DNA from: Octopus bimaculoides
Lineage: Eukaryota
Assembly (NCBI RefSeq): GCF_001194135.2
Contig: NC_068993.1
Location: 1,372,814-1,436,813 of the forward strand
DNA length: 64,000 nt
Direction: 5' to 3'
The position numbers were made by a program, and so were the translations under genes. This document shows positions 29,730-55,073 of the stretch, piece after piece. Every line of letters starts with the position of its first letter. Positions within the stretch are counted from its first letter, which is position 1. Under the pieces are notes generated by a model. It saw only the letters and a list, made by a program, of their open reading frames with translations. It had not been told where the DNA came from and made no database searches.

Positions 29730-30213
29730 GTGAGTTTAAAAATAGATTCATCAGAAATTGTTGAACTTCCTGTGTTTGCAGCTACAGCAATACCATCTCT
29801 AGTAAAGTTCTAAGAAGCCTGGTATATATATATATATACAGTATCTCAGAGAAGTATGTACACCCCTAAAAAATTTCAGTGGCAATTAAAAGCACCCACT
29901 ACACTCTCGGAGTGGTTGGCTTTCGGAAAGGCATCCAGCTGTAGAAACTCTGCCAGATCAGATTGGAGCCTGGTGCAACCATCTGGTTTCACCAGTCCTC
30001 AGTCAAATCGTCCAACCCATGCTAGCATGGAAAGCAGACGTTAAACGATGATGATGATGATAATGGCAATTTTTTTCTGAAATTTTTTAGGGGTGGGCAT
30101 ACTTCTGTAAGATACTCTCTCTCTATATATATATATATTTACACACACACACATACATATGTAAATGTCTGATATTATTTTCATCTTTATATTTCGTTAC
30201 AGTGTTGCTTAAA

Positions 30214-30381
30214 ATGTCTTCCAACATGCCTGAATCAAAGAACTTGACAGAAAGTATTGCTGAGAAAGTCGATGAAGAACTTGATGACTTCCTGAATGAA
30301 ATGATGAAAAAGTCTAAGAAAACTGCTGAAACTGAAGACAAAAGTTTTGAAGAAATTGTTGCTGTGAGTTCAGTTAACTTC

Positions 30382-30414
<33 letters not shown>

Positions 30415-31091
30415 CACACATACACACATGTACTCAATGTATCTGTGAATATGATGCATGTTTACTGTGTTTGTATCAAAATTTTGGGGAAAGATAACCC
30501 ATGTCATCTCCTCGGAGGTATGCACCTTGTCTGTTTAATGACAGCATCACTAATAACTTGTTTTAATTTTCTTGTTTAATGATTTGCTTAGAGAAGGAAG
30601 AGCCAGGTTTGTGACTATTTCTAAGGTCTCAAAGATTGTTGAGAGAAAGGCAGGAAGTTTTCCTCACATTTAGCCCAAATGCTTGCAACAGAGTGGCCTC
30701 TTCTGAGGGCACTCATAGGCCAGGAGAAGGAGGAGGGGAAGGAGGTGGTGGTGGCGAACTGGGTTGTGGATTAAGTCTGCTACTCGTTAAGTGGAATGAT
30801 CTCTCTGAGAAGCTTCAGTACAGTTTCCATCTATAAAATGTCACAACTGTTTGGCTGCTTTGTGGCTGTGGTAGAAGACACTTGTCCAAGGTGTCACTCA
30901 CTGGGACCAAAGAGTTGCAGGTCAAACGTTAACTACTCAGTCACAGCTGGGCTTTGGACATCTTGACCACACAGCAAATGGCTGCCTTCATTAACCAAAG
31001 TAGCAAATAAAGACACAAATGTCAAAGATTTACAAAGATGGATGGAATGAGAAAATGGATGTAAAAGAATATCAACTCTCTCCTCCTCCTC

Positions 31092-31130
<39 letters not shown>

Positions 31131-33841
31131 CTTGTCTTTCATCCAGTTAGTAGAAGAGTTGATAACCATAAAGTTTGTAATTCAGTTTTCAATTATTTTA
31201 TAAAAAGTAATTCAGCATTAATTAATTAATTAATGAAAATTCTTACAGGAATTAGAAACCCATCCGGCTTTTTTGAAAGAAATTGATCCTTCCAAACCCC
31301 TTCATCCAGCTGTTGAAGCTCTGCAGGCCCTGAAGTATGAATGTGAAAACCCTGTCAGTAAGTATAGTCAATCCCTTTTGCATAAGGGTCAGTCCCTTCT
31401 GTGTGTAATCAAAATTTTCTATCTGGGGAAGAGGCCCTTCTGTAAGGGATCAAACCTTTTTAAAATCAATTTTGTTTCACCAGGAAAATGGATTGCTACA
31501 ATTGTTGAGCAAGAAAATCCTGTGCCATATTTGGCCAGAGTCTTTTACATTCTGAGTTTCATTCCTGCCATGGTTGACATTATCTTTCATCATTTCAAGA
31601 TCAATGAAATACTTGGTCAGTGGAACTGCTCACATTTTGGTAGTTGTGAGGAATTTTGTTGCTAGGATCTATTGGCAACAGAAATCTTCTACATGAACAA
31701 GAATTAATCAAGTTATGTGGTTCCAAATTTAAATGCCACCAAAACTTGAAGGAATGTAACCAAATATCTCAAAGTCTTTGTTGAACTCTCTTACAATTCT
31801 GTCATCTGATGCCCGTCCACTTCGCATTTCCACCAGTTGCCATTTTATAGTCATGGTTCTGGAACTTCACTTATGTCTTCTTTTGGGGTAAATTATGAGA
31901 AAAAACGTATACAGAGTTCATTTTATTGATAAGATTTATAAGGTTCCAGTTCTGATGTTGTAACTGTTTCAGGTATGTTTATCTTTTACTTGGTTCAGTC
32001 ATTAGACTGCAGCCATGCTGGAGCACCACCTTAAAGAGTTTTTAGTCAAACAAATCGAACCCTGTACATTTTTTTCAGACACACAGCCATGCCTGCACTC
32101 ATAATAACAATAGTTGCTCATCTCCAAAATTCAAACAAAATCTTTCGCTAATTTTTTTTTTTCCAAATTCGTTTTTGATGAGTTTTTGAGAATTCCATTT
32201 TGTTTTCAATTTACTTACAGTGAAAGCAGACAGTTTTAAGGAAGAAGGAAATTATCTGTTCAAAAAACAAGACTATCGTACAGCTATTGCAAATTACACT
32301 GAAGGAATCAAGGTTCAAGCACCGGACAGGATGTTAAATGCTTCGTTATATTGTAATAGAGCAGCTTCTAATTATCAACTTGGTAAGTAAAGAAAAACTG
32401 ATTGATAAACATTCTCTCATGGAAGACTGGAAACAAGCAACATCGCTCTGTATACATACACATGCACACACACATGCAAGCACACACACACTCACAAGAT
32501 AGGTTTCTTTCAATTTCTGTCTACCAAATCCACTCACAAAGCTTTGGTCAGCCTAGAACACTTGCGCAAGGTGCCATGCCCATTCCTAATATTAAACGGT
32601 ACCTTATCCAAACAACAGACTCTTGTAATCCATTCCATCATGGAAAATAGTTACGAAATGACGATAATCAATATGAATGATGATGATGTTAAATTTCTTC
32701 AGGTATTTAGTTCTGTTCCTTAATGATAAAGAATTGGTAGCAGAGACAGTAGAGTATCAGGTAGAATGCCTTGTGGTATTTGCTCCAGCTCTCTGTGCTC
32801 TGAATTCAAATCCTATCAGGTCAGCTTTGCCTTTGATCCTTTCAGGGTCCAAATGCATAATACCACTCCAGGGTGGTGGTCAGGTGGAACTGTTAGGGTT
32901 TTTGGGTATCAGTTCCTACTCTTCACCTCCTTCCACCAGCCTCTCTCTCCTGACAGAAACAATCTTTTGGGCCCCAGCTTACCGTTTTTAGCCTTCAGTG
33001 AGGCCATCACATGAAGCAACATGTCAACCATACCAATAAAAAAAGCGAGTGGAGCATTGCTCTTTTTTCTCTTTTTTGAAACCTTTAGTTTCTCTGATCT
33101 TCAGATTGTGTCAGCATGTTTTAAAGACCAAAACCATTTCTTGTTTTTGGCATCATTTCTAAATGTATTATGACTGTTGCTATTTCAGGAAACTTTGGTT
33201 ATGCTTTATTTGACTGTGTCATGGCCTGTAAATTCAAGGAACAGTATTTGAAAGCCTTCATCAGAGGTGAGTTCTGTTGTTTAAATTTCTAAACAAATAT
33301 TAAAATGGTAAAATGACAGACATAGGACAGACATGTGCTATTAAATGTCTTGAAGTATATAATTACATCTGCTTCTCTTCTGAGTTCAACTCTTGTCTTA
33401 AGTCAATAAGATAGATACCAGTTCACCAAAATAAAACTATGGTATTGAGTACTCTTTTTTTTTTTTTTGCCAACAGCTAACACTAAATGTGTGTGTGTGT
33501 GTGTGTCTTAGTGGATCTCTTTTGTTCAGTGATGAGGATTTACACTTGTTTGATCGACTGAGTTACCCGCCCCTGAATAAACACGTCCTTGGCTGAGTAT
33601 TTGCACACATGTGTTACCCTTAACACAGTTCTCTAATAGAACCAGTGTAACACAGTGTTTGAAAAGGCTGAACCTTTTTAATTACTGGTACAACCCATTC
33701 AAAGGGCTTCTATACAGTTTCCATTTACCCATTTTTACTCACAAAGTATAGGTTGGTCTGAGGCTCTGAGAAAATGACAATTACCGAAGATGCTACACTG
33801 GAATCGAACCCATGAACCTTTTAACCATTCAACCATCGCCA

Positions 33842-33899
<58 letters not shown>

Positions 33900-36800
33900 T
33901 TACTCGTATCATTTCTTCTATGTTCTCATTATCTGTGTATATCTTCTTGTTTTGACAAGGATCTCAGTGCTGCATTGAACTGAAGAAATTCTCAGACGCT
34001 ATTAAATGGTGTGAAGCTGGTTTGAAAATATCCTTTATCAATTAGTTTAAAGATTTCTCTTTGACTAAACACTTTCAAAGATGTCTTTCAAATGTCTCTA
34101 AAATTACATTCCTTGACTCATAATTTATTTTGAACCTGAAAATGAGAAACTTTCTGCTTTAAAAGAGAAATCACTAAAATTAAAGGTAATTTATTTTCTG
34201 ATATTTTTGGTAATTTTTTACATAATTTCTTCTTCTGTTTTCCCATGCTTAAACCTGGTCTTTTCTTGTCCTTCATCTCACCATTTGTTGCAATCCTTTT
34301 GCCATCATCTTGAAGTTCCACTACTACATCTAATGTCTTTTTTTTTTATCTTCCTCCCCTACAAATTCCTTCCACTTGTGTTAGTCGTCGTGTATTTATC
34401 CTTCATCCTCCCTGGCTTCTCAATCTCTGTACCTGTAACACCAGGTAACACCTTAATGTCTTCCATGATGTATTATGTACACCATTTTAGACATCCTCAT
34501 CTTTCCTCTGTGCATCCATGATAATGCTATCACTTAGGATCGAAGTTACTTACAGAAGGGCCTCATCTGTCAGTCCTTATAAAAGCTGTGAATGTTGGCA
34601 TCACTGTTGCTATTCTGTTGTCTATGACTGATCTAAACTTAATCATCATTTTATCTCATACTCTGACCACCTCTCTTTATCTAACCATTTCTCTGCCAAC
34701 AATATTCCTCTTCTACCCGTTCCTGTATTATGTCCCCACAGGAATTATATATGTGCACCTTACACATGAGGAGTTTTGCTTCATGTTACCTTCTGTACAC
34801 TGCACACATCTACCGTTGTTTTGTGCCCCTGAATTTTTGCTCTTGACAGCAAGAGGAGAGTTTCCAATGGTAGGTGAGGATTGTTTGATGTCTGTATTCT
34901 GTACTTAAGATGAAAGTTGGTGCTGTTGTCTCATGACATTGAAAGTGTTTGTCACACTTGGCCAGATGTTCACACCTAACCACCTCAGTAACAGAGTAGC
35001 AGTCCTTTTATATGCAATTAGTGTTTTATATATGTAATTGTAATGATGTCGACACAGGTTTATTGGTTGAATACCCTTTTTATCACTAACCATTGCAACG
35101 TAGGCTGGCTACATTTTATCGTGCCACCCACATTTGAGGTTTCATGTTTATTAGTGCATTTATTTAACATCCATTTTTCAATGCTAGCGTAACTTGGACA
35201 GTGTTTCATGTCCTCTGTGTCAATTTGGAATTTAGAGTTTCCACCCTCCTGTTTGATTGGCCTTTGTTGTGCAGACGATACCATTTCTACAAAGCATTTC
35301 TTTTGTAGAAAATCCAAGACCGTGATTTACGTAAACAACAATTACAAGAGAGGAAAGCTGATGGTTTAGAATCGAAACTGTTTAAAGAAATTCATGTAAG
35401 TTTTATGTTTTGTTTGATATCATCCGATTGTTGTTGTTGAGCTCCAGGTTAGTCTCATGGTATAAACCGTTCAGCTGTAGCTCAGCCTTGTATGTAATGT
35501 GTAACGTTTGGCTCCAGATCTTCACTGATGACCCAGCTATGTTATGTATTACAAAACAAGCAACTCACATGGCTTTTGAAATTCTGCTTATTCTACGACC
35601 AGTCATGTTTTTTTATTATATTCACATTTCAACACCAAATCATTGGGTTTCCCCAAGTTCTTTTCTCATTCATTGTTCAGATAAAAAGTTTCTCAAAATT
35701 TTATTCCTGCTGTTATTTTCAGAAACGACATATCAAAATGAAGACTGACAAACAGAATGGAAAAACTATTTTAAGTTTATCAGATCTGGAAGGAAGTAAT
35801 CCAGGTGGTGCCAAAGTTTACCTTGATGATGCAGGACTTCTCCATTGGCCAGTTTTGTTTATGTATCCAGAATATAACCAAACTGATTTCATTGAGAGCT
35901 TCAGTGAAAACCATTGGTACATATTTATATTTCTATATGTTTATTTATACATCATTATCATCATCATTTTAATGTCCACTTTTCCATGCTTGCATGGGTC
36001 AGAAGGAACTTGTTGAGGCAGATTTTCTATGGCCAGATGCCCTTTGTCACAAGCCTTTACCTAAAGGTAATATTTCCCCAGAACCCTGTGTTTGAGAATC
36101 AAGCTTCCTAACCACAGAGCCACACCTGCATCTATGACACACCTGTGCCTCTTATAGTTCTGTCTCTTTACACTCAGTAGATTTAGTAAATTTTGAAGAG
36201 TTTTGTACAATATCAATTTATAATGCAGAAGGCACAAGCTGGGCTGTATGGTCAAGGAATTCACTTCTAAGTGTCCATTGCAGTCAGCTGATGATTTTAT
36301 CTTCCTTACTATATTTGGTGTATCAAGAGCTTTGGTTCTGTCAGTCTGATAAATTCCTTATCACACTTCTTTGATGACAATCAGGCAGTAAACCAAAGGG
36401 ACCAAAAATAATAATAAAAAAACAAAAGGTTCTCTCTAGTCTGCCTCAAATACAACTTTATTTCTCTTGTTTCCTAAAACACGATTTGATATTAAGAAAT
36501 ACATCAACAACCATTGTTTCACAAATAAATGTGAATCTCTAGTAATTCTATTCTCCATATTAGATGTGTTTGGAATGGTTCAATAATTTGTATTTTGCAT
36601 ATTAAAATTAATTTAATTACTCTGTTGCTTTTTTTCTAGCTTTTCTGACCATATTTTGGAAATGTTTCAATCTTGTACGGTTCCTTGGGATGAAGAACAC
36701 AAGTATGTTCCTGAAAACATTGAGGTAACAGCAGAATTATTAAATTCTTAAGAATTCTTTAGAAAATCTAATTATATTTAATTTCCTGTTATCATTTAAT

Positions 36801-38563
36801 TGTTGTAAGGAATTTTTTAATTGCTTAATCAGGAAGAAAGACAATGCTCATGACTTTTTTAAAGGTCTCTGACAGAAGTTGGAAGGGAGCAAGGAGGGTC
36901 TAAATGTTTGCCAAAGAGAGGACTCCATTAAAGGCACACAGGGACCAGGTGATGGGGGATGAACAGGGGCAACAGACCCAGGGAGACCACAGCTGGATTT
37001 GAACTCAGAATAAAAGGATTCAGACTCTATGCTGCAGAGCATCCTGGTTCTCCAACAACTTTGCTTGTTTGTCAGTATAGACTCGTTCTTTATTTATTGA
37101 CCCTGAATAAAGGACAGTCACAGTTGACCTTGGCAGGATTTGAACTTAGGAGGCAATTAGCCAGAATAAATACCACAAGGTATGTGTCTGATACTGATTG
37201 TTCTGCCACCTTATTCAACAACAATAATGGGTTCAAATTTTGGCACAAGGCCAGCAAGGTTTTTTTTTTATGTAGGGGGTAAGTCGATTACAGAAAGACG
37301 TGCTGCTAAGCATTTTGTCCAATGTGTTAATGGTTCTGCCAGCAGGCCACCTGAATAATAATAATAATAATAATTTAGAGTCTGAGATATGTAGCGTTGA
37401 TTCCTTAGAGACAATTGTGCTACATAAAGAATTATTATCATGTATTTCCAGATATATTTTGAAGAAAACAAAACAGAAAGTCTGTTTAGAATTCCTCCTG
37501 AAAAGTCATTGCTTGAAATTTTACAACATGAAAAGTAAGTACCTTAATAAATATCATCATCATTTAACGTCGGTTGTCCATGCTGGCATGGGTTGGATGG
37601 TTTGACCAGGGGCTGGCAAGCTGGGAGGCTGCGGCAGATACCAGTCTGTTTTGGCACGGTTTTCTATGGCTGGATGCCCTTCCTAACACTAACCACTTTA
37701 CAGAGTGCAATGGGTGCTTTTTATGTGACACCGGCACAGGTGCCATTTGCATGACACCAGTATACATATATGCATACACACACATGCGTACGCGTGCTCA
37801 CTCTCTCACTCGGTGAATAATTAAGTGATGTGTTTTCATCTCAATTAACTTTTTGTTTTTCCTAATTAATATTTTTGTTTCTTTGTTATGCATATATTAT
37901 TTTAAACATGAAATTGTTAGTGACAAAAAAAAAAAAAAAACATGGATTTTGTTGTTAATATTTTTATTGAAATTAACTTTTTAACTTTTCTTTACCTCAA
38001 TCTTACATCAATGAAAAACTTTCAAATTGTATTTTTATTGCTAACGATAGTAGTGTTCTTTAAATAAAAATTAAAATACACCAGACAGATTTATTAAGCA
38101 TGAAGATAAGTTTAGGATTAGAGATCATCACAACTAGAATTACAATTTTAGGTGAACTAAGATCACATAGGTTTATGAGGAACATTGTGGCTAGGTTCCA
38201 TGACATCAGTTGAACAGAACTGTAGGAATTATATTTCTACCAGTTCATTATATTAACAAAGAATATTACTTCAGTAAAATGATGCTAGGTTAAAGTTTCA
38301 TTTTCTGCTTAAAAATGAGAAATTGGTTATGTTTCTTTTGTCCATTAATTTGTCTTATTCTTCCAGTAAACCATTTTAGTTTCATTTCTTATACTAACTT
38401 GGTTTAATGCTGTTTGGTCTAAAACAATTTCGAATCTCATTTTTTTTTCTTTCTTTTTGCCAGCTTCACAGTTATTGGCGGCACACCTGCATTTATACTG
38501 CTGGTTGCAAATTCAAAATTTAAAGGTGAATTTCTAAAGCATTACACATTGAAATCTTTGTAA
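30214..38563 (+). CDS. TTC4: Tetratricopeptide repeat protein 4 (Cns1/Dpit47-like Hsp70/Hsp90 co-chaperone), 390 aa, 11 coding exons
   Basis: Exons 30214-30363, 31249-31357, 32221-32382, 33189-33266, 33960-34027, 34129-34185, 35309-35395, 35723-35916, 36640-36724, 37452-37534 and 38464-38563 total 1173 nt. TPR clamp peptides ADSFKEEGNYLFKKQDY and LYCNRAASNYQLGN and the Cns1 C-terminal peptide LHWPVLFMYPEYNQTDFI are present. The exon 5-6 join requires a U12-type intron. Confidence 0.93.
34028..34128 (+). other. U12-type (minor spliceosome) intron of TTC4 with predicted AT-AT termini
   Basis: The 5' splice site ATATCCTTT (34028-34036) is a perfect U12 consensus, and the branch site TTCCTTGAC lies at 34109-34117. 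The end at AT 34127-34128, 12 nt after the branch A, restores the frame (GLK|FEPENEKL). The AC at 34134-34135 gives a frameshift and stop. Confidence 0.82.
34230..34900 (-). mobile_element. Degenerate RTE LINE 3' fragment in TTC4 intron 6
   Basis: Purine-rich minus strand with decayed RTE C-terminal-like peptides and no intact ORF. Confidence 0.45.
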
Positions 38564-47885: not shown

Positions 47886-50800
47886 ATGATTAATGAATAT
47901 CTCAGTTTGTTCTTCTTAACGATTTTATTCCATACGTGTGTCCATGGAACGACAATATTTATTGAAGACGAGTGTGTTTGGAGAGAGCAGGCAAAGCTCA
48001 TTGACTGTGATAAGAAATCATTTCAAAGTTTACAGTTTCGTAGGAGCCACCCGGGGTATACAACATTGTCGATAAAAGAAACACCTTTGAAACAATTAGA
48101 CTTTAATATAAGCCATTTACCTGATCTAGAAATCATTGATGCACGAAGAACTAAACTCAACTGTCGAAAAATTAATTTAAGAATTTTGGAGATAGTGGAG
48201 CGCATAATTGTCGACCAACGGACGTGTTTAAACTCAATTTGCTGCCGAAAATTACAAACATTGTCGAACTACGACCGAGATACGAAAGGAAATCACGAAG
48301 AGGCGATGTCTAACCCTGCTGCGTTGATCAGCCTGAACCATTCTGAGCAGTTCCAGTCTGAAGAACCTTTAGATATCGATGTTACATCAGGGATTCAAAG
48401 CAAGAACGACACGAAGTCAGCTTACAACATCATAAGACAGGAAGTACTAGTGAACGGTGCCAAAAGTAAATCAAACAGAAATACCATTAGTATTTCTACG
48501 GAAATAAAAATAAATTATGACCAACCCATCGCTGTTCCTCCTCAACCAGGAACTGGAACCGGTATTCTTATACCTGTAGGTAAGTCAAAGACTTTATTTC
48601 TCATTCACAATAGCTTCCTTTATTTCAATAACCACACTCAGAATTTACATTATCCAACGTGTCGTTGTTTTATTAGAATGGTAANNNNNNNNNNNNNNNN
48701 NNNNNNNNNNNNNNNNNNNNNNNNNNNNNNNNNNNNNNNNNNNNNNNNNNNNNNNNNNNNNNNNNNNNNNNNNNNNNNNNNNNNNNNNNNNNNNNNNNNN
48801 NNNNNNNNNNNNNNNNNNNNNNNNNNNNNNNNNNNNNNNNNNNNNNNNNNNNNNNNNNNNNNNNNNNNNNNNNNNNNNNNNNNNNNNNNNNNNNNNNNNN
48901 NNNNNNNNNNNNNNNNNNNNNNNNNNNNNNNNNNNNNNNNNNNNNNNNNNNNNNNNNNNNNNNNNNNNNNNNNNNNNNNNNNNNNNNNNNNNNNNNNNNN
49001 NNNNNNNNNNNNNNNNNNNNNNNNNNNNNNNNNNNNNNNNNNNNNNNNNNNNNNNNNNNNNNNNNNNNNNNNNNNNNNNNNNNNNNNNNNNNNNNNNNNN
49101 NNNNNNNNNNNNNNNNNNNNNNNNNNNNNNNNNNNNNNNNNNNNNNNNNNNNNNNNNNNNNNNNNNNNNNNNNNNNNNNNNNNNNNNNNNNNNNNNNNNN
49201 NNNNNNNNNNNNNNNNNNNNNNNNNNNNNNNNNNNNNNNNNNNNNNNNNNNNNNNNNNNNNNNNNNNNNNNNNNNNNNNNNNNNNNNNNNNNNNNNNNNN
49301 NNNNNNNNNNNNNNNNNNNNNNNNNNNNNNNNNNNNNNNNNNNNNNNNNNNNNNNNNNNNNNNNNNNNNNNNNNNNNNNNNNNNNNNNNNNNNNNNNNNN
49401 NNNNNNNNNNNNNNNNNNNNNNNNNNNNNNNNNNNNNNNNNNNNNNNNNNNNNNNNNNNNNNNNNNNNNNNNNNNNNNNNNNNNNTGGGAGGGGGTAATT
49501 TTTTTTCTTTTTTGCATATTCGTAATCTCCGACGTCTAAAACGTAGGAATCCGAAAAAAAATATTATATTTACGATTATTTAAGGCAAATACAAGTAAAA
49601 CACACATTCTTTTCACATTAATGTCTTTGCTTGTATTTAATTTCGATTTGTATATGTTCGTCAATTCGCTACGACCTCTTTAAAGTAAACAAAATTCAAA
49701 ATTTTAATTAGTGTGGGTGAAATAATTTTTTTTTTCTTTTTTTGCATATTCGTAATCTCCGACATCTAAAACGTAGGAATCCGAAATTTTTTTTCCAAAA
49801 AATGCGTTTTTCAAGGAGAGGTGCGAAACTTCATTAGCCCCAGATTTGACTATTATCTTTAGCAGGTCAAGCGACCACATTGGATCGTTAGCCTCTTCGT
49901 CAGTTTTGATGTATCAGATAGATATATTGTCAAAGATATTCCAGTCGTGACCATCTTCTATGTTATTATTATTGAGTAGTCTTATTTTTTATCACGTGCT
50001 TTTCACTGCACTACCGAGTACAGCTGTGTGTGCCGTGGGTTTGTTGTGGTGCTCTTATTTTCACTGTATTGAAAGTGTAGGACGTGTGCGGTGCCTAGTG
50101 GTGCTATTTTCTGTATGTTATATATCCTTGTTAGTCCTGCTATTTTTATATTATACCTAATACGCCTACTAGAATAGGAATTGTTTCTGTTTTTAGGGTC
50201 CACATTCAAGTCACCTCTATTTCCAGATATGTGAACCCCCAAGGGTCGTCTGGGCCCCGGTTGAGATAGAGGGCTCTTTGTTTGCTCATCAGTGTTGTTT
50301 ACTGTTTCATGCTCTAACGGCTGTCAGTTCAATCTTCTGTTCTGCCTCAGTGCACCTGGGGCCTAGTGTCCCAGAGTCTCTACACTTCATGCTCCATTGA
50401 TGAAGTGGTGAAAAGGAATCTCCGAATGCTGGACCTCACTGAGGAAACGACAAGGGACCAGGAAATGGGGTGATTTACTGTACCCGTATTATTTCAGTCA
50501 TTTGACTGTGGCCATGCTGGAGCACCAACTTTTGTCGAGGAAATTGACCCCCAGGACTTATTCTTTGTAAGCTTAGTACTTATTCTATTGGTCCCTTTTT
50601 CCAAACCACTAAGTTACGGGGATGTAAGCACATCAGTTGTCAAGTGATGTTGGGGGGGACAAACACAGACACACAAACATATAAATACACATACATATAT
50701 ACGACGGGCTTCTTTCAGTTTCCGTGTACCAAATCCACTTACAAGGCTTTGGTTGGCCCGAGGTGCCACACAGTAGGACTGAACCTGGAACCGTTTACTT

Positions 50801-53800: not shown

Positions 53801-55073
53801 GGTGGAATTTGAACTCAAAATGTAAAGACAGGTGAAATGCTGGGAAGCATTTTGGCCGGCATGCTACCAATTCCACCAGCAATGGTAACAACAACAACAA
53901 GGTATAGTCATGAGTCAGAAGTTGATACCACTTAACAGTTTCACAAGAACTTCAATGTTTCTAGTGTTTCATTGTTTTTTTTACTAAATTTAGTCTCCAT
54001 TAAACCCACTTAACCTTTCCTGACTCACTGCAGACAGTTTCTCAGCCAAACCCACTCCCCACCCACCTCCTCATAAACAATACTATTGCTGGCCCTCTTC
54101 CTCTCTAGCCCTTAGTTACAGTTTAATATATTATTCACCTTCCCCTCACAAATGAAAGTCATTTGGATATACGATGGGAATCTAAGAAAGATTTGAAATA
54201 TTAACAAAGGATGACACACACACACACGTCATTTGTGACGAGAGATGTCAAGTAAACTGAGCAATTGAAAGAGATGAGGTAAGTACTGGAGGTAAAAATA
54301 AACTCATTCCACTGACTAAAAGAATGGTTTGTCCCAAAAGACTGAGCACCACCTTGCCTGCTGAGGGTTGGACACAAGCCTTCTTTGGAGGTGGTGAGCT
54401 ATCATGCTTCCATTGCTTCAACTGGACTTTAGTCTCAGAATCAAAGTGATGGACTCGGGTTTCATCCTGTGAATTTGGCACTTCTTCACACAGCTGTCCT
54501 CGTCCATACACATCACATGATCCTACCAGTGCAGTCGTCTCTCTTGCACACCACATCTGATTCCTCTTGTGCCCAACTTTTCTCTCAAGATGCTTACACT
54601 CTGACAAACATACACACTGGCATCATTTCTTTCAAGCTTATGCATGTCCTCAGCTATCATAGCCCATGTTTCACTGCTATGTAGCATGGCTGTTCGCACA
54701 CAGGCATCCAATAATTTGTCTTCCACTCTGAGAGAGAGGCCCTTTGTTGCCAGCAGGGGTCTGAGCTCTCTGAACTTTGCATTTGTTAGAACTGTCTTCA
54801 TTTACCAAACCCGATTCTAGTCTGTGATAATCCAAACATACCATTTAATCTCTTCAGATGAAATCTCAATTTTTGTGTCTCATTTCAGAGATGGACCTGA
54901 CAATTGTCTACTCAATTCTAGGATTATTGGTGCTAATGACTCTGGTTTCAGTCAGCTTCAGCCTCTATGTTCTGTGTAGTCGGAAGAAGCAAAGAAATTG
55001 CAGTATCCGAGACTTCATGCCAACCAGTAGTTTGGCTTCGAGATCAAGATCACAAGGAACTGTGATATTATGA
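47886..55073 (+). CDS. Uncharacterised type-I single-pass membrane protein with signal peptide and miniature LRR-like, Cys-flanked ectodomain, 292 aa
   Basis: Exon 1 47886-48579 (G|GTAAGT donor) joins exon 2 54889-55073 (TTTCAG| acceptor) in phase 1. The product has a signal peptide MINEYLSLFFLTILFHTCVHG, LRR-like segments TTLSIKETPLKQL and LPDLEIIDARRTKLNC, and a TM segment IVYSILGLLVLMTLVSVSFSLYVLC followed by RKKQR. AATAAA occurs at 55119 and 55128. Extra exons could be hidden in the 48685-49485 gap. Confidence 0.75.
49486..49860. mobile_element. Dispersed repeat (possibly Helitron-derived) with an internal duplication; an opposite-orientation copy is at 63760-64000
   Basis: GCATATTCGTAATCTCCGAC(G/A)TCTAAAACGTAGGAATCCGAA occurs twice (about 49514 and 49743), and its reverse complement ends the window. 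AGGAGAGGTGCGAAACT is also shared. Confidence 0.5.
53289..53455. repeat. Near-perfect fold-back: 78-bp arms, 11-nt loop, one mismatch; derived from the hammerhead-like SINE/PLE tail
   Basis: Arm 53289-53366 is the reverse complement of 53378-53455 except for one C:A pair (A53432). The loop is GTTCGAAATTT. Confidence 0.95.
54300..54800 (-). mobile_element. Adjacent RTE LINE fragment (about 54480-54800) and mariner transposase fragment (about 54300-54480)
   Basis: RTE peptide AKFRELRPLLATKGLSLRV..LLDACVRTAMLHSSETW...GIRCGVQERRLHW abuts the mariner peptide QDETRVHHFDSETKVQLKQWKH..SPPPKKA.VQPSAGKV. Confidence 0.85.

What the first reader, a model, noticed from the sequence alone, without database searches (positions are those of the whole stretch)
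34028..34135. Minor-spliceosome intron in TTC4 with rare AT-AT ends and a decoy AC that would trigger a frameshift
Seen: a perfect U12 5' site ATATCCTTT directly after ...GCT GGT TTG AAA, and a U12 branch site TTCCTTGAC. The canonical AC end (34134-34135) shifts the frame to LKMRNFLL*, and retention gives ISFIN*. In-frame ends after an A-containing dinucleotide are AT (34127-34128, 12 nt from the branch A) or AA (34133-34134). AT gives GLK|FEPENEKL, collinear with human GLQIDAKEKKL as I recall it. Established: AT-AT and AT-AA U12 introns exist but are rare, and U12 3' sites are chosen largely by distance from the branch point. Inference: competing AT and AC acceptors 7 nt apart could form a built-in unproductive-splicing/NMD switch for a co-chaperone, at a position I believe lacks an intron in human.
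Basis: partly seen in the sequence, partly recalled or inferred. Interest (0 to 1): 0.75.

Follow-up and report, generated by a model that had tools for sequence, protein, structure and literature searches.

The report
AT-AT minor-spliceosome intron in octopus TTC4
A 101-base intron in the octopus co-chaperone gene TTC4 is removed by the rare "minor" splicing machinery and ends in AT instead of the usual AC. It is a real, ancient intron of an already known rare subtype, and nothing shows that the nearby AC works as a frameshifting decoy switch.

Summary
Window 34028-34128 (+) is a 101-nt intron with a perfect U12 5' site (ATATCCTTT) and a U12 branch site (TTCCTTGAC, branch A at 34116). It ends in AT, 12 nt after the branch A. 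RNA-seq reads from three runs, and assembled transcripts from four runs of two Octopus species, all give one joint, 34027>34129 (AT..AT).

Only that joint yields the intact 390-aa TTC4 protein. That protein is identical to RefSeq XP_014768665.1 of Octopus bimaculoides, so the junction is already annotated.

The intron is ancient. At the same codo boundary, Argonauta and the hemichordate Ptychodera have a canonical AT-AC U12 intron. An oyster has a GT-AG U12 intron, two gastropods have a U2-type intron, and a toad and a leafhopper have none. The Octopus AT end is therefore a single C>T change at an unchanged 3' site, a switch already documented between human and mouse.

The "decoy AC / NMD switch" idea is not supported. 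The AC lies 19 nt from the branch A, outside the 11-13 nt optimum. It is part of Glu-Pro codons and is absent in Argonauta. No joint using it was listed, though read depth was low. Intron retention, which reads ISFIN*, is the visible unproductive product.

This is a new member of a known kind, of modest interest.

The parts
30214..38563 (+). TTC4 (Cns1/TTC4 co-chaperone) coding region. It has 11 exons: 30214-30363, 31249-31357, 32221-32382, 33189-33266, 33960-34027, 34129-34185, 35309-35395, 35723-35916, 36640-36724, 37452-37534 and 38464-38563. All other introns are GT-AG.
   Evidence: Exon table and the intact 390-aa ORF are. Pfam finds the Wheel domain PF18972 (E=1.7e-21) plus TPR repeats. 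The protein is identical to XP_014768665.1, TTC4 isoform X1 of Octopus bimaculoides.
33960..34027 (+). Upstream exon (exon 5), ending ...GCT GGT TTG AAA (A G L K). The intron that follows is in phase 0.
34028..34128 (+). The 101-nt U12-type intron with AT-AT termini.
   Evidence: The joint 34027>34129 appears in raw RNA-seq reads and in transcript contigs of two species.
34028..34036 (+). U12-type 5' splice site, ATATCCTTT.
   Evidence: The same 9-mer sits at the orthologous site in O. sinensis, Argonauta and Ptychodera; the oyster has GTATCCTTA.
34109..34117 (+). U12-type branch-site sequence, TTCCTTGAC. The presumed branch A is 34116.
   Evidence: TTCCTTGA is conserved in O. sinensis, O. vulgaris, Argonauta and Ptychodera. 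The branch A itself was not mapped.
34127..34128 (+). The 3' terminal dinucleotide actually used, AT. It lies 12 nt after the branch A and is the only A-N dinucleotide 10-15 nt from it.
   Evidence: It aligns base for base with the AC of Argonauta.
34134..34135 (+). The 'decoy' AC, 19 nt after the branch A. It is the third base of the Glu codon plus the first base of the Pro codon (GAA CCT). Using it would give LKMRNFLL* with TAA at 34160-34162. No use was detected.
34043..34045 (+). In-frame TAG reached when the intron is retained (…GLK ISFIN*).
   Evidence: Unspliced reads and contigs span the intron. Two database gene models end exactly here.
34129..34185 (+). Downstream exon (exon 6), TTT GAA CCT GAA AAT ... 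TTA AAG (FEPENEKLSALKEKSLKLK), followed by a GTAA donor.

Best explanation
Window 34028-34128 is an ancient minor-spliceosome (U12-type) intron of the octopus TTC4 gene. Its last base has mutated from C to T, turning AT-AC into AT-AT.

The U11/U12 di-snRNP would recognise the perfect 5' site ATATCCTTT and the branch site TTCCTTGAC. The second catalytic step then takes the only A-N dinucleotide at the optimal distance, 12 nt after the branch A. U12 3' sites are chosen mainly by distance and tolerate variation in the last base.

Splicing therefore still occurs at exactly the ancestral position and yields the full-length co-chaperone. The visible unproductive product is the unspliced (retained) form, which reads ISFIN*. 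A form spliced at the downstream AC was not seen.

Shown: the junction, the motifs, the orthology and the C>T change. Inferred: dependence on U12 snRNPs, the identity of the branch A, and the selection of the 3' site by distance.
For: - Junction: 34027>34129 (AT..AT, both=0) in 10 raw reads from 3 runs and in contigs of 4 runs from two species. No other joint was listed.
- Coding: only this joint gives an uninterrupted 390-aa ORF with TPR repeats and the Cns1/TTC4 Wheel domain. The ORF is identical to RefSeq XP_014768665.1. The alignment with 10 homologues has no gap at the junction.
- Orthologous intron, same phase-0 position: AT-AC U12 in Argonauta hians and Ptychodera flava, AT-AT in O. sinensis and O. 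vulgaris, GT-AG U12 (GTATCCTTA...TCTTTAAC) in Saccostrea.
- The change: the Argonauta and Octopus 3' ends align base for base, TTCCTTGATTCATAATGTAC|CTT against TTCCTTGACTCATAATTTAT|TTT. The 12-nt distance is the same and the only change at the terminus is C>T.
- 3' site choice: AT at d=12 is the only A-N dinucleotide 10-15 nt from the branch A.
- Literature: the optimum branch-site-to-3' distance is 11-13 nt, and non-canonical termini support U12 splicing (PMC3584512). There are 6 AT-AT introns in human and 6 in mouse, with AT-AC/AT-AT switches between them in ERCC5, Gpaa1, Zc3hdc6 and Slc9a8 (PMC1557818, Tables 2-3). [quoted passage not shown]
Against: - Dependence on U12/U6atac snRNPs was not tested, and the branch point was not mapped.
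- Read depth is low: 10 junction reads, with about 6% of each run sampled. The tool lists only joints seen in at least 3 reads, so rare alternative joints would be missed.
- The AC-to-AT polarity rests on two outgroups (Argonauta, Ptychodera). No squid, cuttlefish or Nautilus genome was examined.
Confidence: 0.9

Rival explanations
1. One reading: the AT (34127-28) and the canonical AC (34134-35) compete as acceptors. Use of the AC shifts the frame to LKMRNFLL* and sends the mRNA to NMD. This would make a built-in unproductive-splicing switch that tunes TTC4 level.
For: The AC exists, and using it would give a premature TAA at 34160-34162. The three Octopus species with AT-AT all carry GAA-CCT (which contains the AC), whereas Argonauta, with AT-AC, carries GAG-CCT. 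U12 3' site choice is described as error-prone (PMC3584512).
Against: No joint to 34136 was listed in 3 raw-read runs or in 4 contig runs. In X21 and X22 the binned depth just after 34129 is fully accounted for by the AT-AT junction reads (my arithmetic). The AC is 19 nt from the branch A, outside the 11-13 nt optimum (PMC3584512). It arises from a synonymous third-position difference in conserved Glu-Pro codons, and three taxa cannot show selection for it.
Confidence: 0.05
2. The weakened AT terminus makes this intron slow to splice, so regulated intron retention (ISFIN*, nuclear detention or NMD) sets the TTC4 level. This would be a minor-intron 'molecular switch' acting through retention, not through a decoy acceptor.
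For: Unspliced coverage runs across the intron at depth about 2 in X21 and 2-4 in X23, against 2 and 5 junction reads. The first 20 nt of the next GT-AG intron have depth 0 in all three runs. In organism A the unspliced contig has a word depth of 2.8 and 2, against 3 and 4 for the spliced contig. In human, A-type (AT-AN) minor introns have relatively high basal retention (PMC8280824).
Against: The numbers are tiny. X22 shows no retention. Total-RNA libraries contain pre-mRNA. There is no comparison with the AT-AC ortholog in Argonauta and no evidence of regulation. Some retention is generic to minor introns and need not be a function.
Confidence: 0.25
3. Artefact: the genome really reads AC (or carries an indel) at the 3' end, or the intron is removed by the major spliceosome as a U2-type AT-AC-like or GT-AG intron.
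For: None found.
Against: Three independent assemblies read TAT|TTT (window, O. sinensis, O. vulgaris). Unspliced RNA shows no variant at 34127-28. The joint has no positional ambiguity (both=0). The 5' site and branch site are U12 consensus, with no polypyrimidine tract, and the orthologs are canonical U12 introns.
Confidence: 0.02

Closest known systems
Non-canonical A-type (AT-AN) U12 introns, AT-AT subtype. Examples are human ERCC5 and IK and mouse Gpaa1, Slc9a8 and Zc3hdc6 (SpliceRack, PMC1557818).
   Same: It has a perfect ATATCCTT 5' site, a TCCTTRAC branch site 12 nt from the 3' end, and a T as the last base. The canonical AT-AC state is present in a related species, the same AC/AT switch seen between human and mouse.
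   Different: It lies in a different gene and phylum, a cephalopod TTC4. The vertebrate examined (Bufo bufo) has lost the intron at this position, so no vertebrate counterpart of this particular intron was found (human was not examined).
Evolutionary fates of U12 introns: subtype switching, U12-to-U2 conversion and loss. I recall Burge, Padgett and Sharp 1998 for this; the themes are also treated in PMC7367187 and PMC10639083.
   Same: One orthologous intron position shows every state. It is AT-AC in Ptychodera and Argonauta, AT-AT in Octopus, U12 GT-AG in Saccostrea, U2 GT-AG in Littorina and Pomacea, and lost in Bufo and Macrosteles.
   Different: Nothing differs mechanistically. It is a compact illustration of the known pattern, not an exception to it.
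Minor introns as retention-based regulators. PMC8280824 reports higher basal retention of A-type introns. The U6atac-limited 'molecular switch' idea is recalled from Younis et al. 2013 and was not read here.
   Same: Some unspliced transcripts were seen. Retention introduces an early stop (ISFIN*).
   Different: No evidence of regulation was obtained here, and the depth is too low to quantify retention.
Alternative-3'-site unproductive splicing coupled to NMD (poison acceptors in major-spliceosome genes).
   Same: On paper, an out-of-frame acceptor lies 7 nt downstream and would create a premature stop.
   Different: The alternative junction was not observed. U12 3' sites are set by distance from the branch site, and alternative splicing of U12 introns is reported as nearly absent (PMC3584512).

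Membership tests
U12-type (minor-spliceosome) intron | 5' splice site matching /RTATCCTT | tested here: met
   ATATCCTTT lies at 34028-34036 and starts exactly at the RNA-defined junction.
U12-type (minor-spliceosome) intron | Branch-site consensus TCCTTRAY close to the 3' end (optimum 11-13 nt, PMC3584512) | tested here: met
   TTCCTTGAC lies at 34109-34117. The presumed branch A, 34116, is 12 nt before the last intron base.
U12-type (minor-spliceosome) intron | No polypyrimidine tract between branch site and 3' end | tested here: met
   The branch site is followed directly by CTCATAATTTAT and preceded by the A-rich CTCTAAAATTACA (by inspection).
U12-type (minor-spliceosome) intron | Excised in vivo at the predicted boundaries | tested here: met
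   The joint 34027>34129 is seen in 7 RNA runs of two species.
U12-type (minor-spliceosome) intron | Orthologous to accepted U12-type introns in other species | tested here: met
   The same phase-0 position holds AT-AC U12 introns in Argonauta and Ptychodera and a GT-AG U12 intron in Saccostrea.
U12-type (minor-spliceosome) intron | Splicing depends on U11/U12/U4atac/U6atac snRNPs | not testable with these tools
   This needs snRNA knock-down or antisense blocking in octopus cells or extracts.
AT-AT subtype of non-canonical U12 introns | Terminal dinucleotides AT...AT in both genome and transcripts | tested here: met
   The tool reports 'ends AT..AT'. Three Octopus assemblies agree.
   It was not listed in any run. 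However, there are only 10 junction reads, and the tool hides joints with fewer than 3 reads.
   The AC is part of the GAA-CCT (Glu-Pro) codons. Argonauta has GAG-CCT, without an AC.
   This needs an experiment.
TTC4 / Cns1 Hsp90 co-chaperone | TPR repeats followed by a C-terminal Cns1/TTC4 Wheel domain | tested here: met
   Pfam finds PF18972 Wheel (E=1.7e-21, 77 bits against a cut-off of 27) plus TPR_1 and TPR_2. The protein is identical to RefSeq TTC4 isoform X1 of O. bimaculoides.

The most novel reading that the evidence does not exclude
In the Octopus lineage, two changes arose together: the terminal AC became AT, and a synonymous GAG>GAA created a new canonical AC 7 nt downstream. Together they would form a low-level competing acceptor or retention switch that makes TTC4 output sensitive to minor-spliceosome activity. 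That would be a lineage-specific unproductive-splicing control of an Hsp90 co-chaperone.
Probability: 0.05. Interest if true: 0.55.

Novelty: new member of a known kind. Interest (0 to 1): 0.3.

Why it matters
Biologically this is an ordinary example of a known rare class, non-canonical AT-AT U12 introns. It does have illustrative value: one intron position shows all the classical fates of a minor intron across bilaterians. These are AT-AC, AT-AT, U12 GT-AG, conversion to U2, and loss.

The practical value is for annotation. The non-canonical end has broken gene models. UniProt A0A0L8HX29 (O. bimaculoides) and CAI9731657.1 (O. vulgaris) are truncated at ...GLKISFIN. The O. vulgaris model for the C-terminal half starts at a spurious ATG inside the intron. 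Annotation pipelines for cephalopod genomes need to be aware of AT-AN introns.

Tried and rejected
- After the shared daily limit for read laying was exhausted. I therefore could not lay the DNA runs of organisms C-E, sample RNA more deeply, or get RNA-based exon maps for the rest of the gene.
- A 96-aa fragment query found no homologues and gave only generic TPR hits in Pfam and PDB. The full C-terminal part was needed.
- The N-terminal exons were not found by motif guessing. They were later located with the O. sinensis protein.
- I used a human TTC4 sequence written from memory only as a lead to locate exons. No conclusion rests on it.
- A literature search for 'TTC4' plus 'minor intron' returned nothing.
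- Dietrich 2001 and 2005 and Levine & Durbin 2001 are not held. The distance rule is therefore cited from the Turunen review (PMC3584512).
The Physella protein was not on record.
- Rejected: assembly error at the 3' end, GT-AG alternatives (none in RNA), and the AA end at 34133-34. The AA end would delete Phe-Glu relative to all homologues, and no joint supports it.

Full report
**1. What is in the sequence**

- An exon ends ...GCT GGT TTG AAA at 34027.
- ATATCCTTT follows at 34028-34036.
- TTCCTTGAC lies at 34109-34117, with the presumed branch A at 34116.
- The candidate 3' ends are AT (34127-28), AA (34133-34) and AC (34134-35).

- The AT end gives GLK|FEPENEKL.
- The AA end gives GLK|PENEKL.
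- The AC end gives GLK|LKMRNFLL*.
- Retention reads ISFIN*, with TAG at 34043-45.

The AT at distance 12 is the only A-N dinucleotide 10-15 nt from the branch A.

**2. Is it more than chance?**

Each 9-mer alone is at chance frequency: 2 found against about 1.4 expected in 64 kb on both strands. Among the eight RTATCCTT sites in the window, however, only this one has a TCCTTRAY within 2.8 kb downstream; here it lies 82 nt away. By my arithmetic, the pairing is expected about 0.0015 times per window. The RNA evidence makes the statistical argument secondary.

**3. RNA evidence**

Raw paired-end RNA-seq reads were laid on 33945-34260. They came from three 2026 runs with the same species label as the DNA run (X15) that holds every sampled word of the stretch.
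- They give one joint, 34027>34129, 'skips 101, ends AT..AT'.
- It is seen in 2+3+5 reads with different start points.
- It has no positional ambiguity (both=0).

Assembled transcript contigs from four further runs, of two species (organisms A and B), carry the same joint.
- Organism A's unspliced contig differs from the window at four intron positions: 34072, 34085, 34119 and 34125.
- It does not differ at the termini.
- No other joint was listed in any run.

Unspliced molecules are present.
- Intron depth is about 2 in X21, 0 in X22 and 2-4 in X23.
- The unspliced contigs in X1 and X2 have word depths of 2.8 and 2, against 3 and 4 for the spliced contigs.
- The first 20 nt of the next, GT-AG, intron have zero depth in all three raw runs.

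**4. The gene**

I located exons by similarity and checked them by their splice sites. The gene has 11 exons between 30214 and 38563 on the + strand. All ten other introns are GT-AG. With the AT-AT joint the ORF is an uninterrupted 390 aa.
- Pfam finds TPR repeats and the Cns1/TTC4 Wheel domain (PF18972, E=1.7e-21).
- The protein is letter-for-letter XP_014768665.1, 'tetratricopeptide repeat protein 4 isoform X1 [Octopus bimaculoides]'.

The window is therefore O. bimaculoides, and RefSeq already uses this junction. Isoform X2 (XP_014768667.1) keeps the junction and differs only in an alternative last exon at 54887-54976.

**5. The same intron in other species**

I fetched genomic loci for annotated homologues and mapped each protein back onto its DNA with a script. 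The state at the same phase-0 position, after WC[ED]xGL[KM], is as follows.

| Species | Group | State at this position | Detail |
|---|---|---|---|
| O. sinensis | octopod | AT-AT | 101 nt |
| O. vulgaris | octopod | AT-AT | |
| Argonauta hians | octopod | AT-AC U12 | 472 nt; ATATCCTTTGTT...TTCCTTGATTCATAATGTAC\|CTT |
| Ptychodera flava | hemichordate | AT-AC U12 | 1166 nt; ATATCCTTTGTG...TTCCTTGACGGTAAGCAC\| |
| Saccostrea cucullata | oyster | GT-AG U12 | GTATCCTTAT...TCTTTAACTGAATGTAG\| |
| Littorina saxatilis | gastropod | U2-type GT-AG | |
| Pomacea canaliculata | gastropod | U2-type GT-AG | |
| Bufo bufo | toad | no intron | |
| Macrosteles | leafhopper | no intron | |

The intron is therefore at least as old as the bilaterian ancestor. 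By parsimony it was U12-type there, probably AT-AC.

The Argonauta and Octopus 3' regions align without gaps. The branch-to-end distance is 12 nt in both. The last intron base is C in Argonauta and T in Octopus. The first exon base also differs, C against T (Leu CTT against Phe TTT).

The protein alignment of 11 homologues has no gap at the junction. This excludes the AA end, which would delete two residues.

**6. How it works**

The best explanation is standard U12 splicing in three steps.
- U11/U12 recognise the perfect 5' site and branch site.
- The 3' site is taken at the optimal distance, published as 11-13 nt (PMC3584512).
- The last base tolerates variation. Non-canonical termini support U12 splicing, often with reduced efficiency (PMC3584512).

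After the C>T change, the same phosphodiester bond is still used.

The motifs, the junction, the orthology and the substitution are shown here. The snRNP dependence, the branch A and the distance rule as applied to this intron are inferred.

**7. The decoy-AC / NMD idea**

Evidence against it:
- No joint to 34136 appears.
- In X21 and X22 the binned depths just after 34129 are exactly what the AT-AT reads alone would give (my arithmetic).
- The AC is 19 nt from the branch A.
- It is GAA|CCT of the conserved Glu-Pro.

In its favour, only a coincidence: the three AT-AT Octopus species have GAA-CCT, while Argonauta (AT-AC) has GAG-CCT. That is a synonymous difference in three taxa and cannot show selection.

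With 10 junction reads and a listing threshold of 3 reads, a minority isoform is not excluded. I put the model at about 5%.

A more plausible unproductive route is retention. Unspliced reads are seen, and human A-type introns have higher basal retention (PMC8280824). The numbers here are too small to call it regulation.

**8. Comparison with what is known**

AT-AT U12 introns are a recognised rare subtype.
- SpliceRack lists 6 in human and 6 in mouse (PMC1557818, Table 2).
- AT-AC/AT-AT switches between the two species occur in ERCC5, Gpaa1, Zc3hdc6 and Slc9a8 (PMC1557818, Table 3).

Subtype switching, conversion to U2 and loss are the classical fates of U12 introns, and this one position shows all of them. 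I found no paper linking TTC4 to minor introns.

**9. Verdict**

This is a new member of a known kind, already implicit in RefSeq. Its main practical consequence is that it has broken gene models in other annotations (section 10).

**10. Side observations**

- UniProt A0A0L8HX29 (O. bimaculoides) and CAI9731657.1 (O. vulgaris) end ...GLKISFIN. That is the read-through of this intron.
- The O. vulgaris model for the C-terminal half (P0004) begins MYFEPENEKL. It starts at an ATG inside the intron, which exists because that species has G at the position of window 34125. The model then continues into unrelated sequence across a 31-kb range.
- The Arabidopsis TPR2 homologue has its own AT-AC U12 intron at a different position.

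Noticed in passing
window 34028-34045; proteins P0058 (UniProt A0A0L8HX29, O. bimaculoides) and P0057 (CAI9731657.1, O. vulgaris): Two deposited gene models for TTC4 stop at ...GLKISFIN. This is the read-through of the AT-AT intron, so the non-canonical intron truncated the annotation.
   Followed up: yes
L010 1501-32519 (O. vulgaris, OX597826.1); corresponds to window 34123-34128: The O. vulgaris model P0004 starts MYFEPENEKL. Its ATG lies inside the intron and exists because that species has G at window position 34125. Its C-terminus runs into unrelated sequence over a 31-kb range, so TTC4 is split and probably fused to a neighbouring gene.
   Followed up: partly
L009 1462-1565 (Arabidopsis thaliana TPR2, CM004359.1): The plant TTC4/Cns1 homologue has an AT-AC U12-type intron (ATATCCTTTTGC...CCTCCTTAGCGCTCTAAAC|). 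It lies at a different position, within the Wheel domain between ...THLDM and MFSED, where the animal genes examined have no intron.
   Followed up: no
window 54887-54976 (+): This is the alternative last exon of RefSeq isoform X2 (XP_014768667.1), encoding ...(K/R)DGPDNCLLNSRIIGANDSGFSQLQPLCSV. It lies 16 kb beyond the normal stop and across an assembly gap. The isoform would lack the end of the Wheel domain.
   Followed up: partly
window about 48800-50000: An assembly gap: the window contains 1583 N, with runs seen around 48800-49400. It explains the apparent GC dip to 0.21 in the composition profile.
   Followed up: yes
window 33846-33900: A compound microsatellite, (CT)n(AT)n(GT)n, lies in the intron upstream of exon 5. 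Similar TC/TA/CA repeats flank exon 1 (30120-30155 and 30385-30420).
   Followed up: no
L007 4576-5047 (Pomacea canaliculata): The annotated TTC4-like protein P0016 implies a non-canonical AA-GA 'intron' and lacks about 15 conserved residues (KY.PENIEIYFED..). This is probably an annotation or assembly artefact, not a real splice.
   Followed up: no
window 34028-34128 compared with 34186-34208: Unspliced RNA reads cover the U12 intron at depth 2-4 in two of three runs. The first 20 nt of the next GT-AG intron have depth 0 in all three runs. This fits slower removal of the minor intron, but the numbers are very small.
   Followed up: partly
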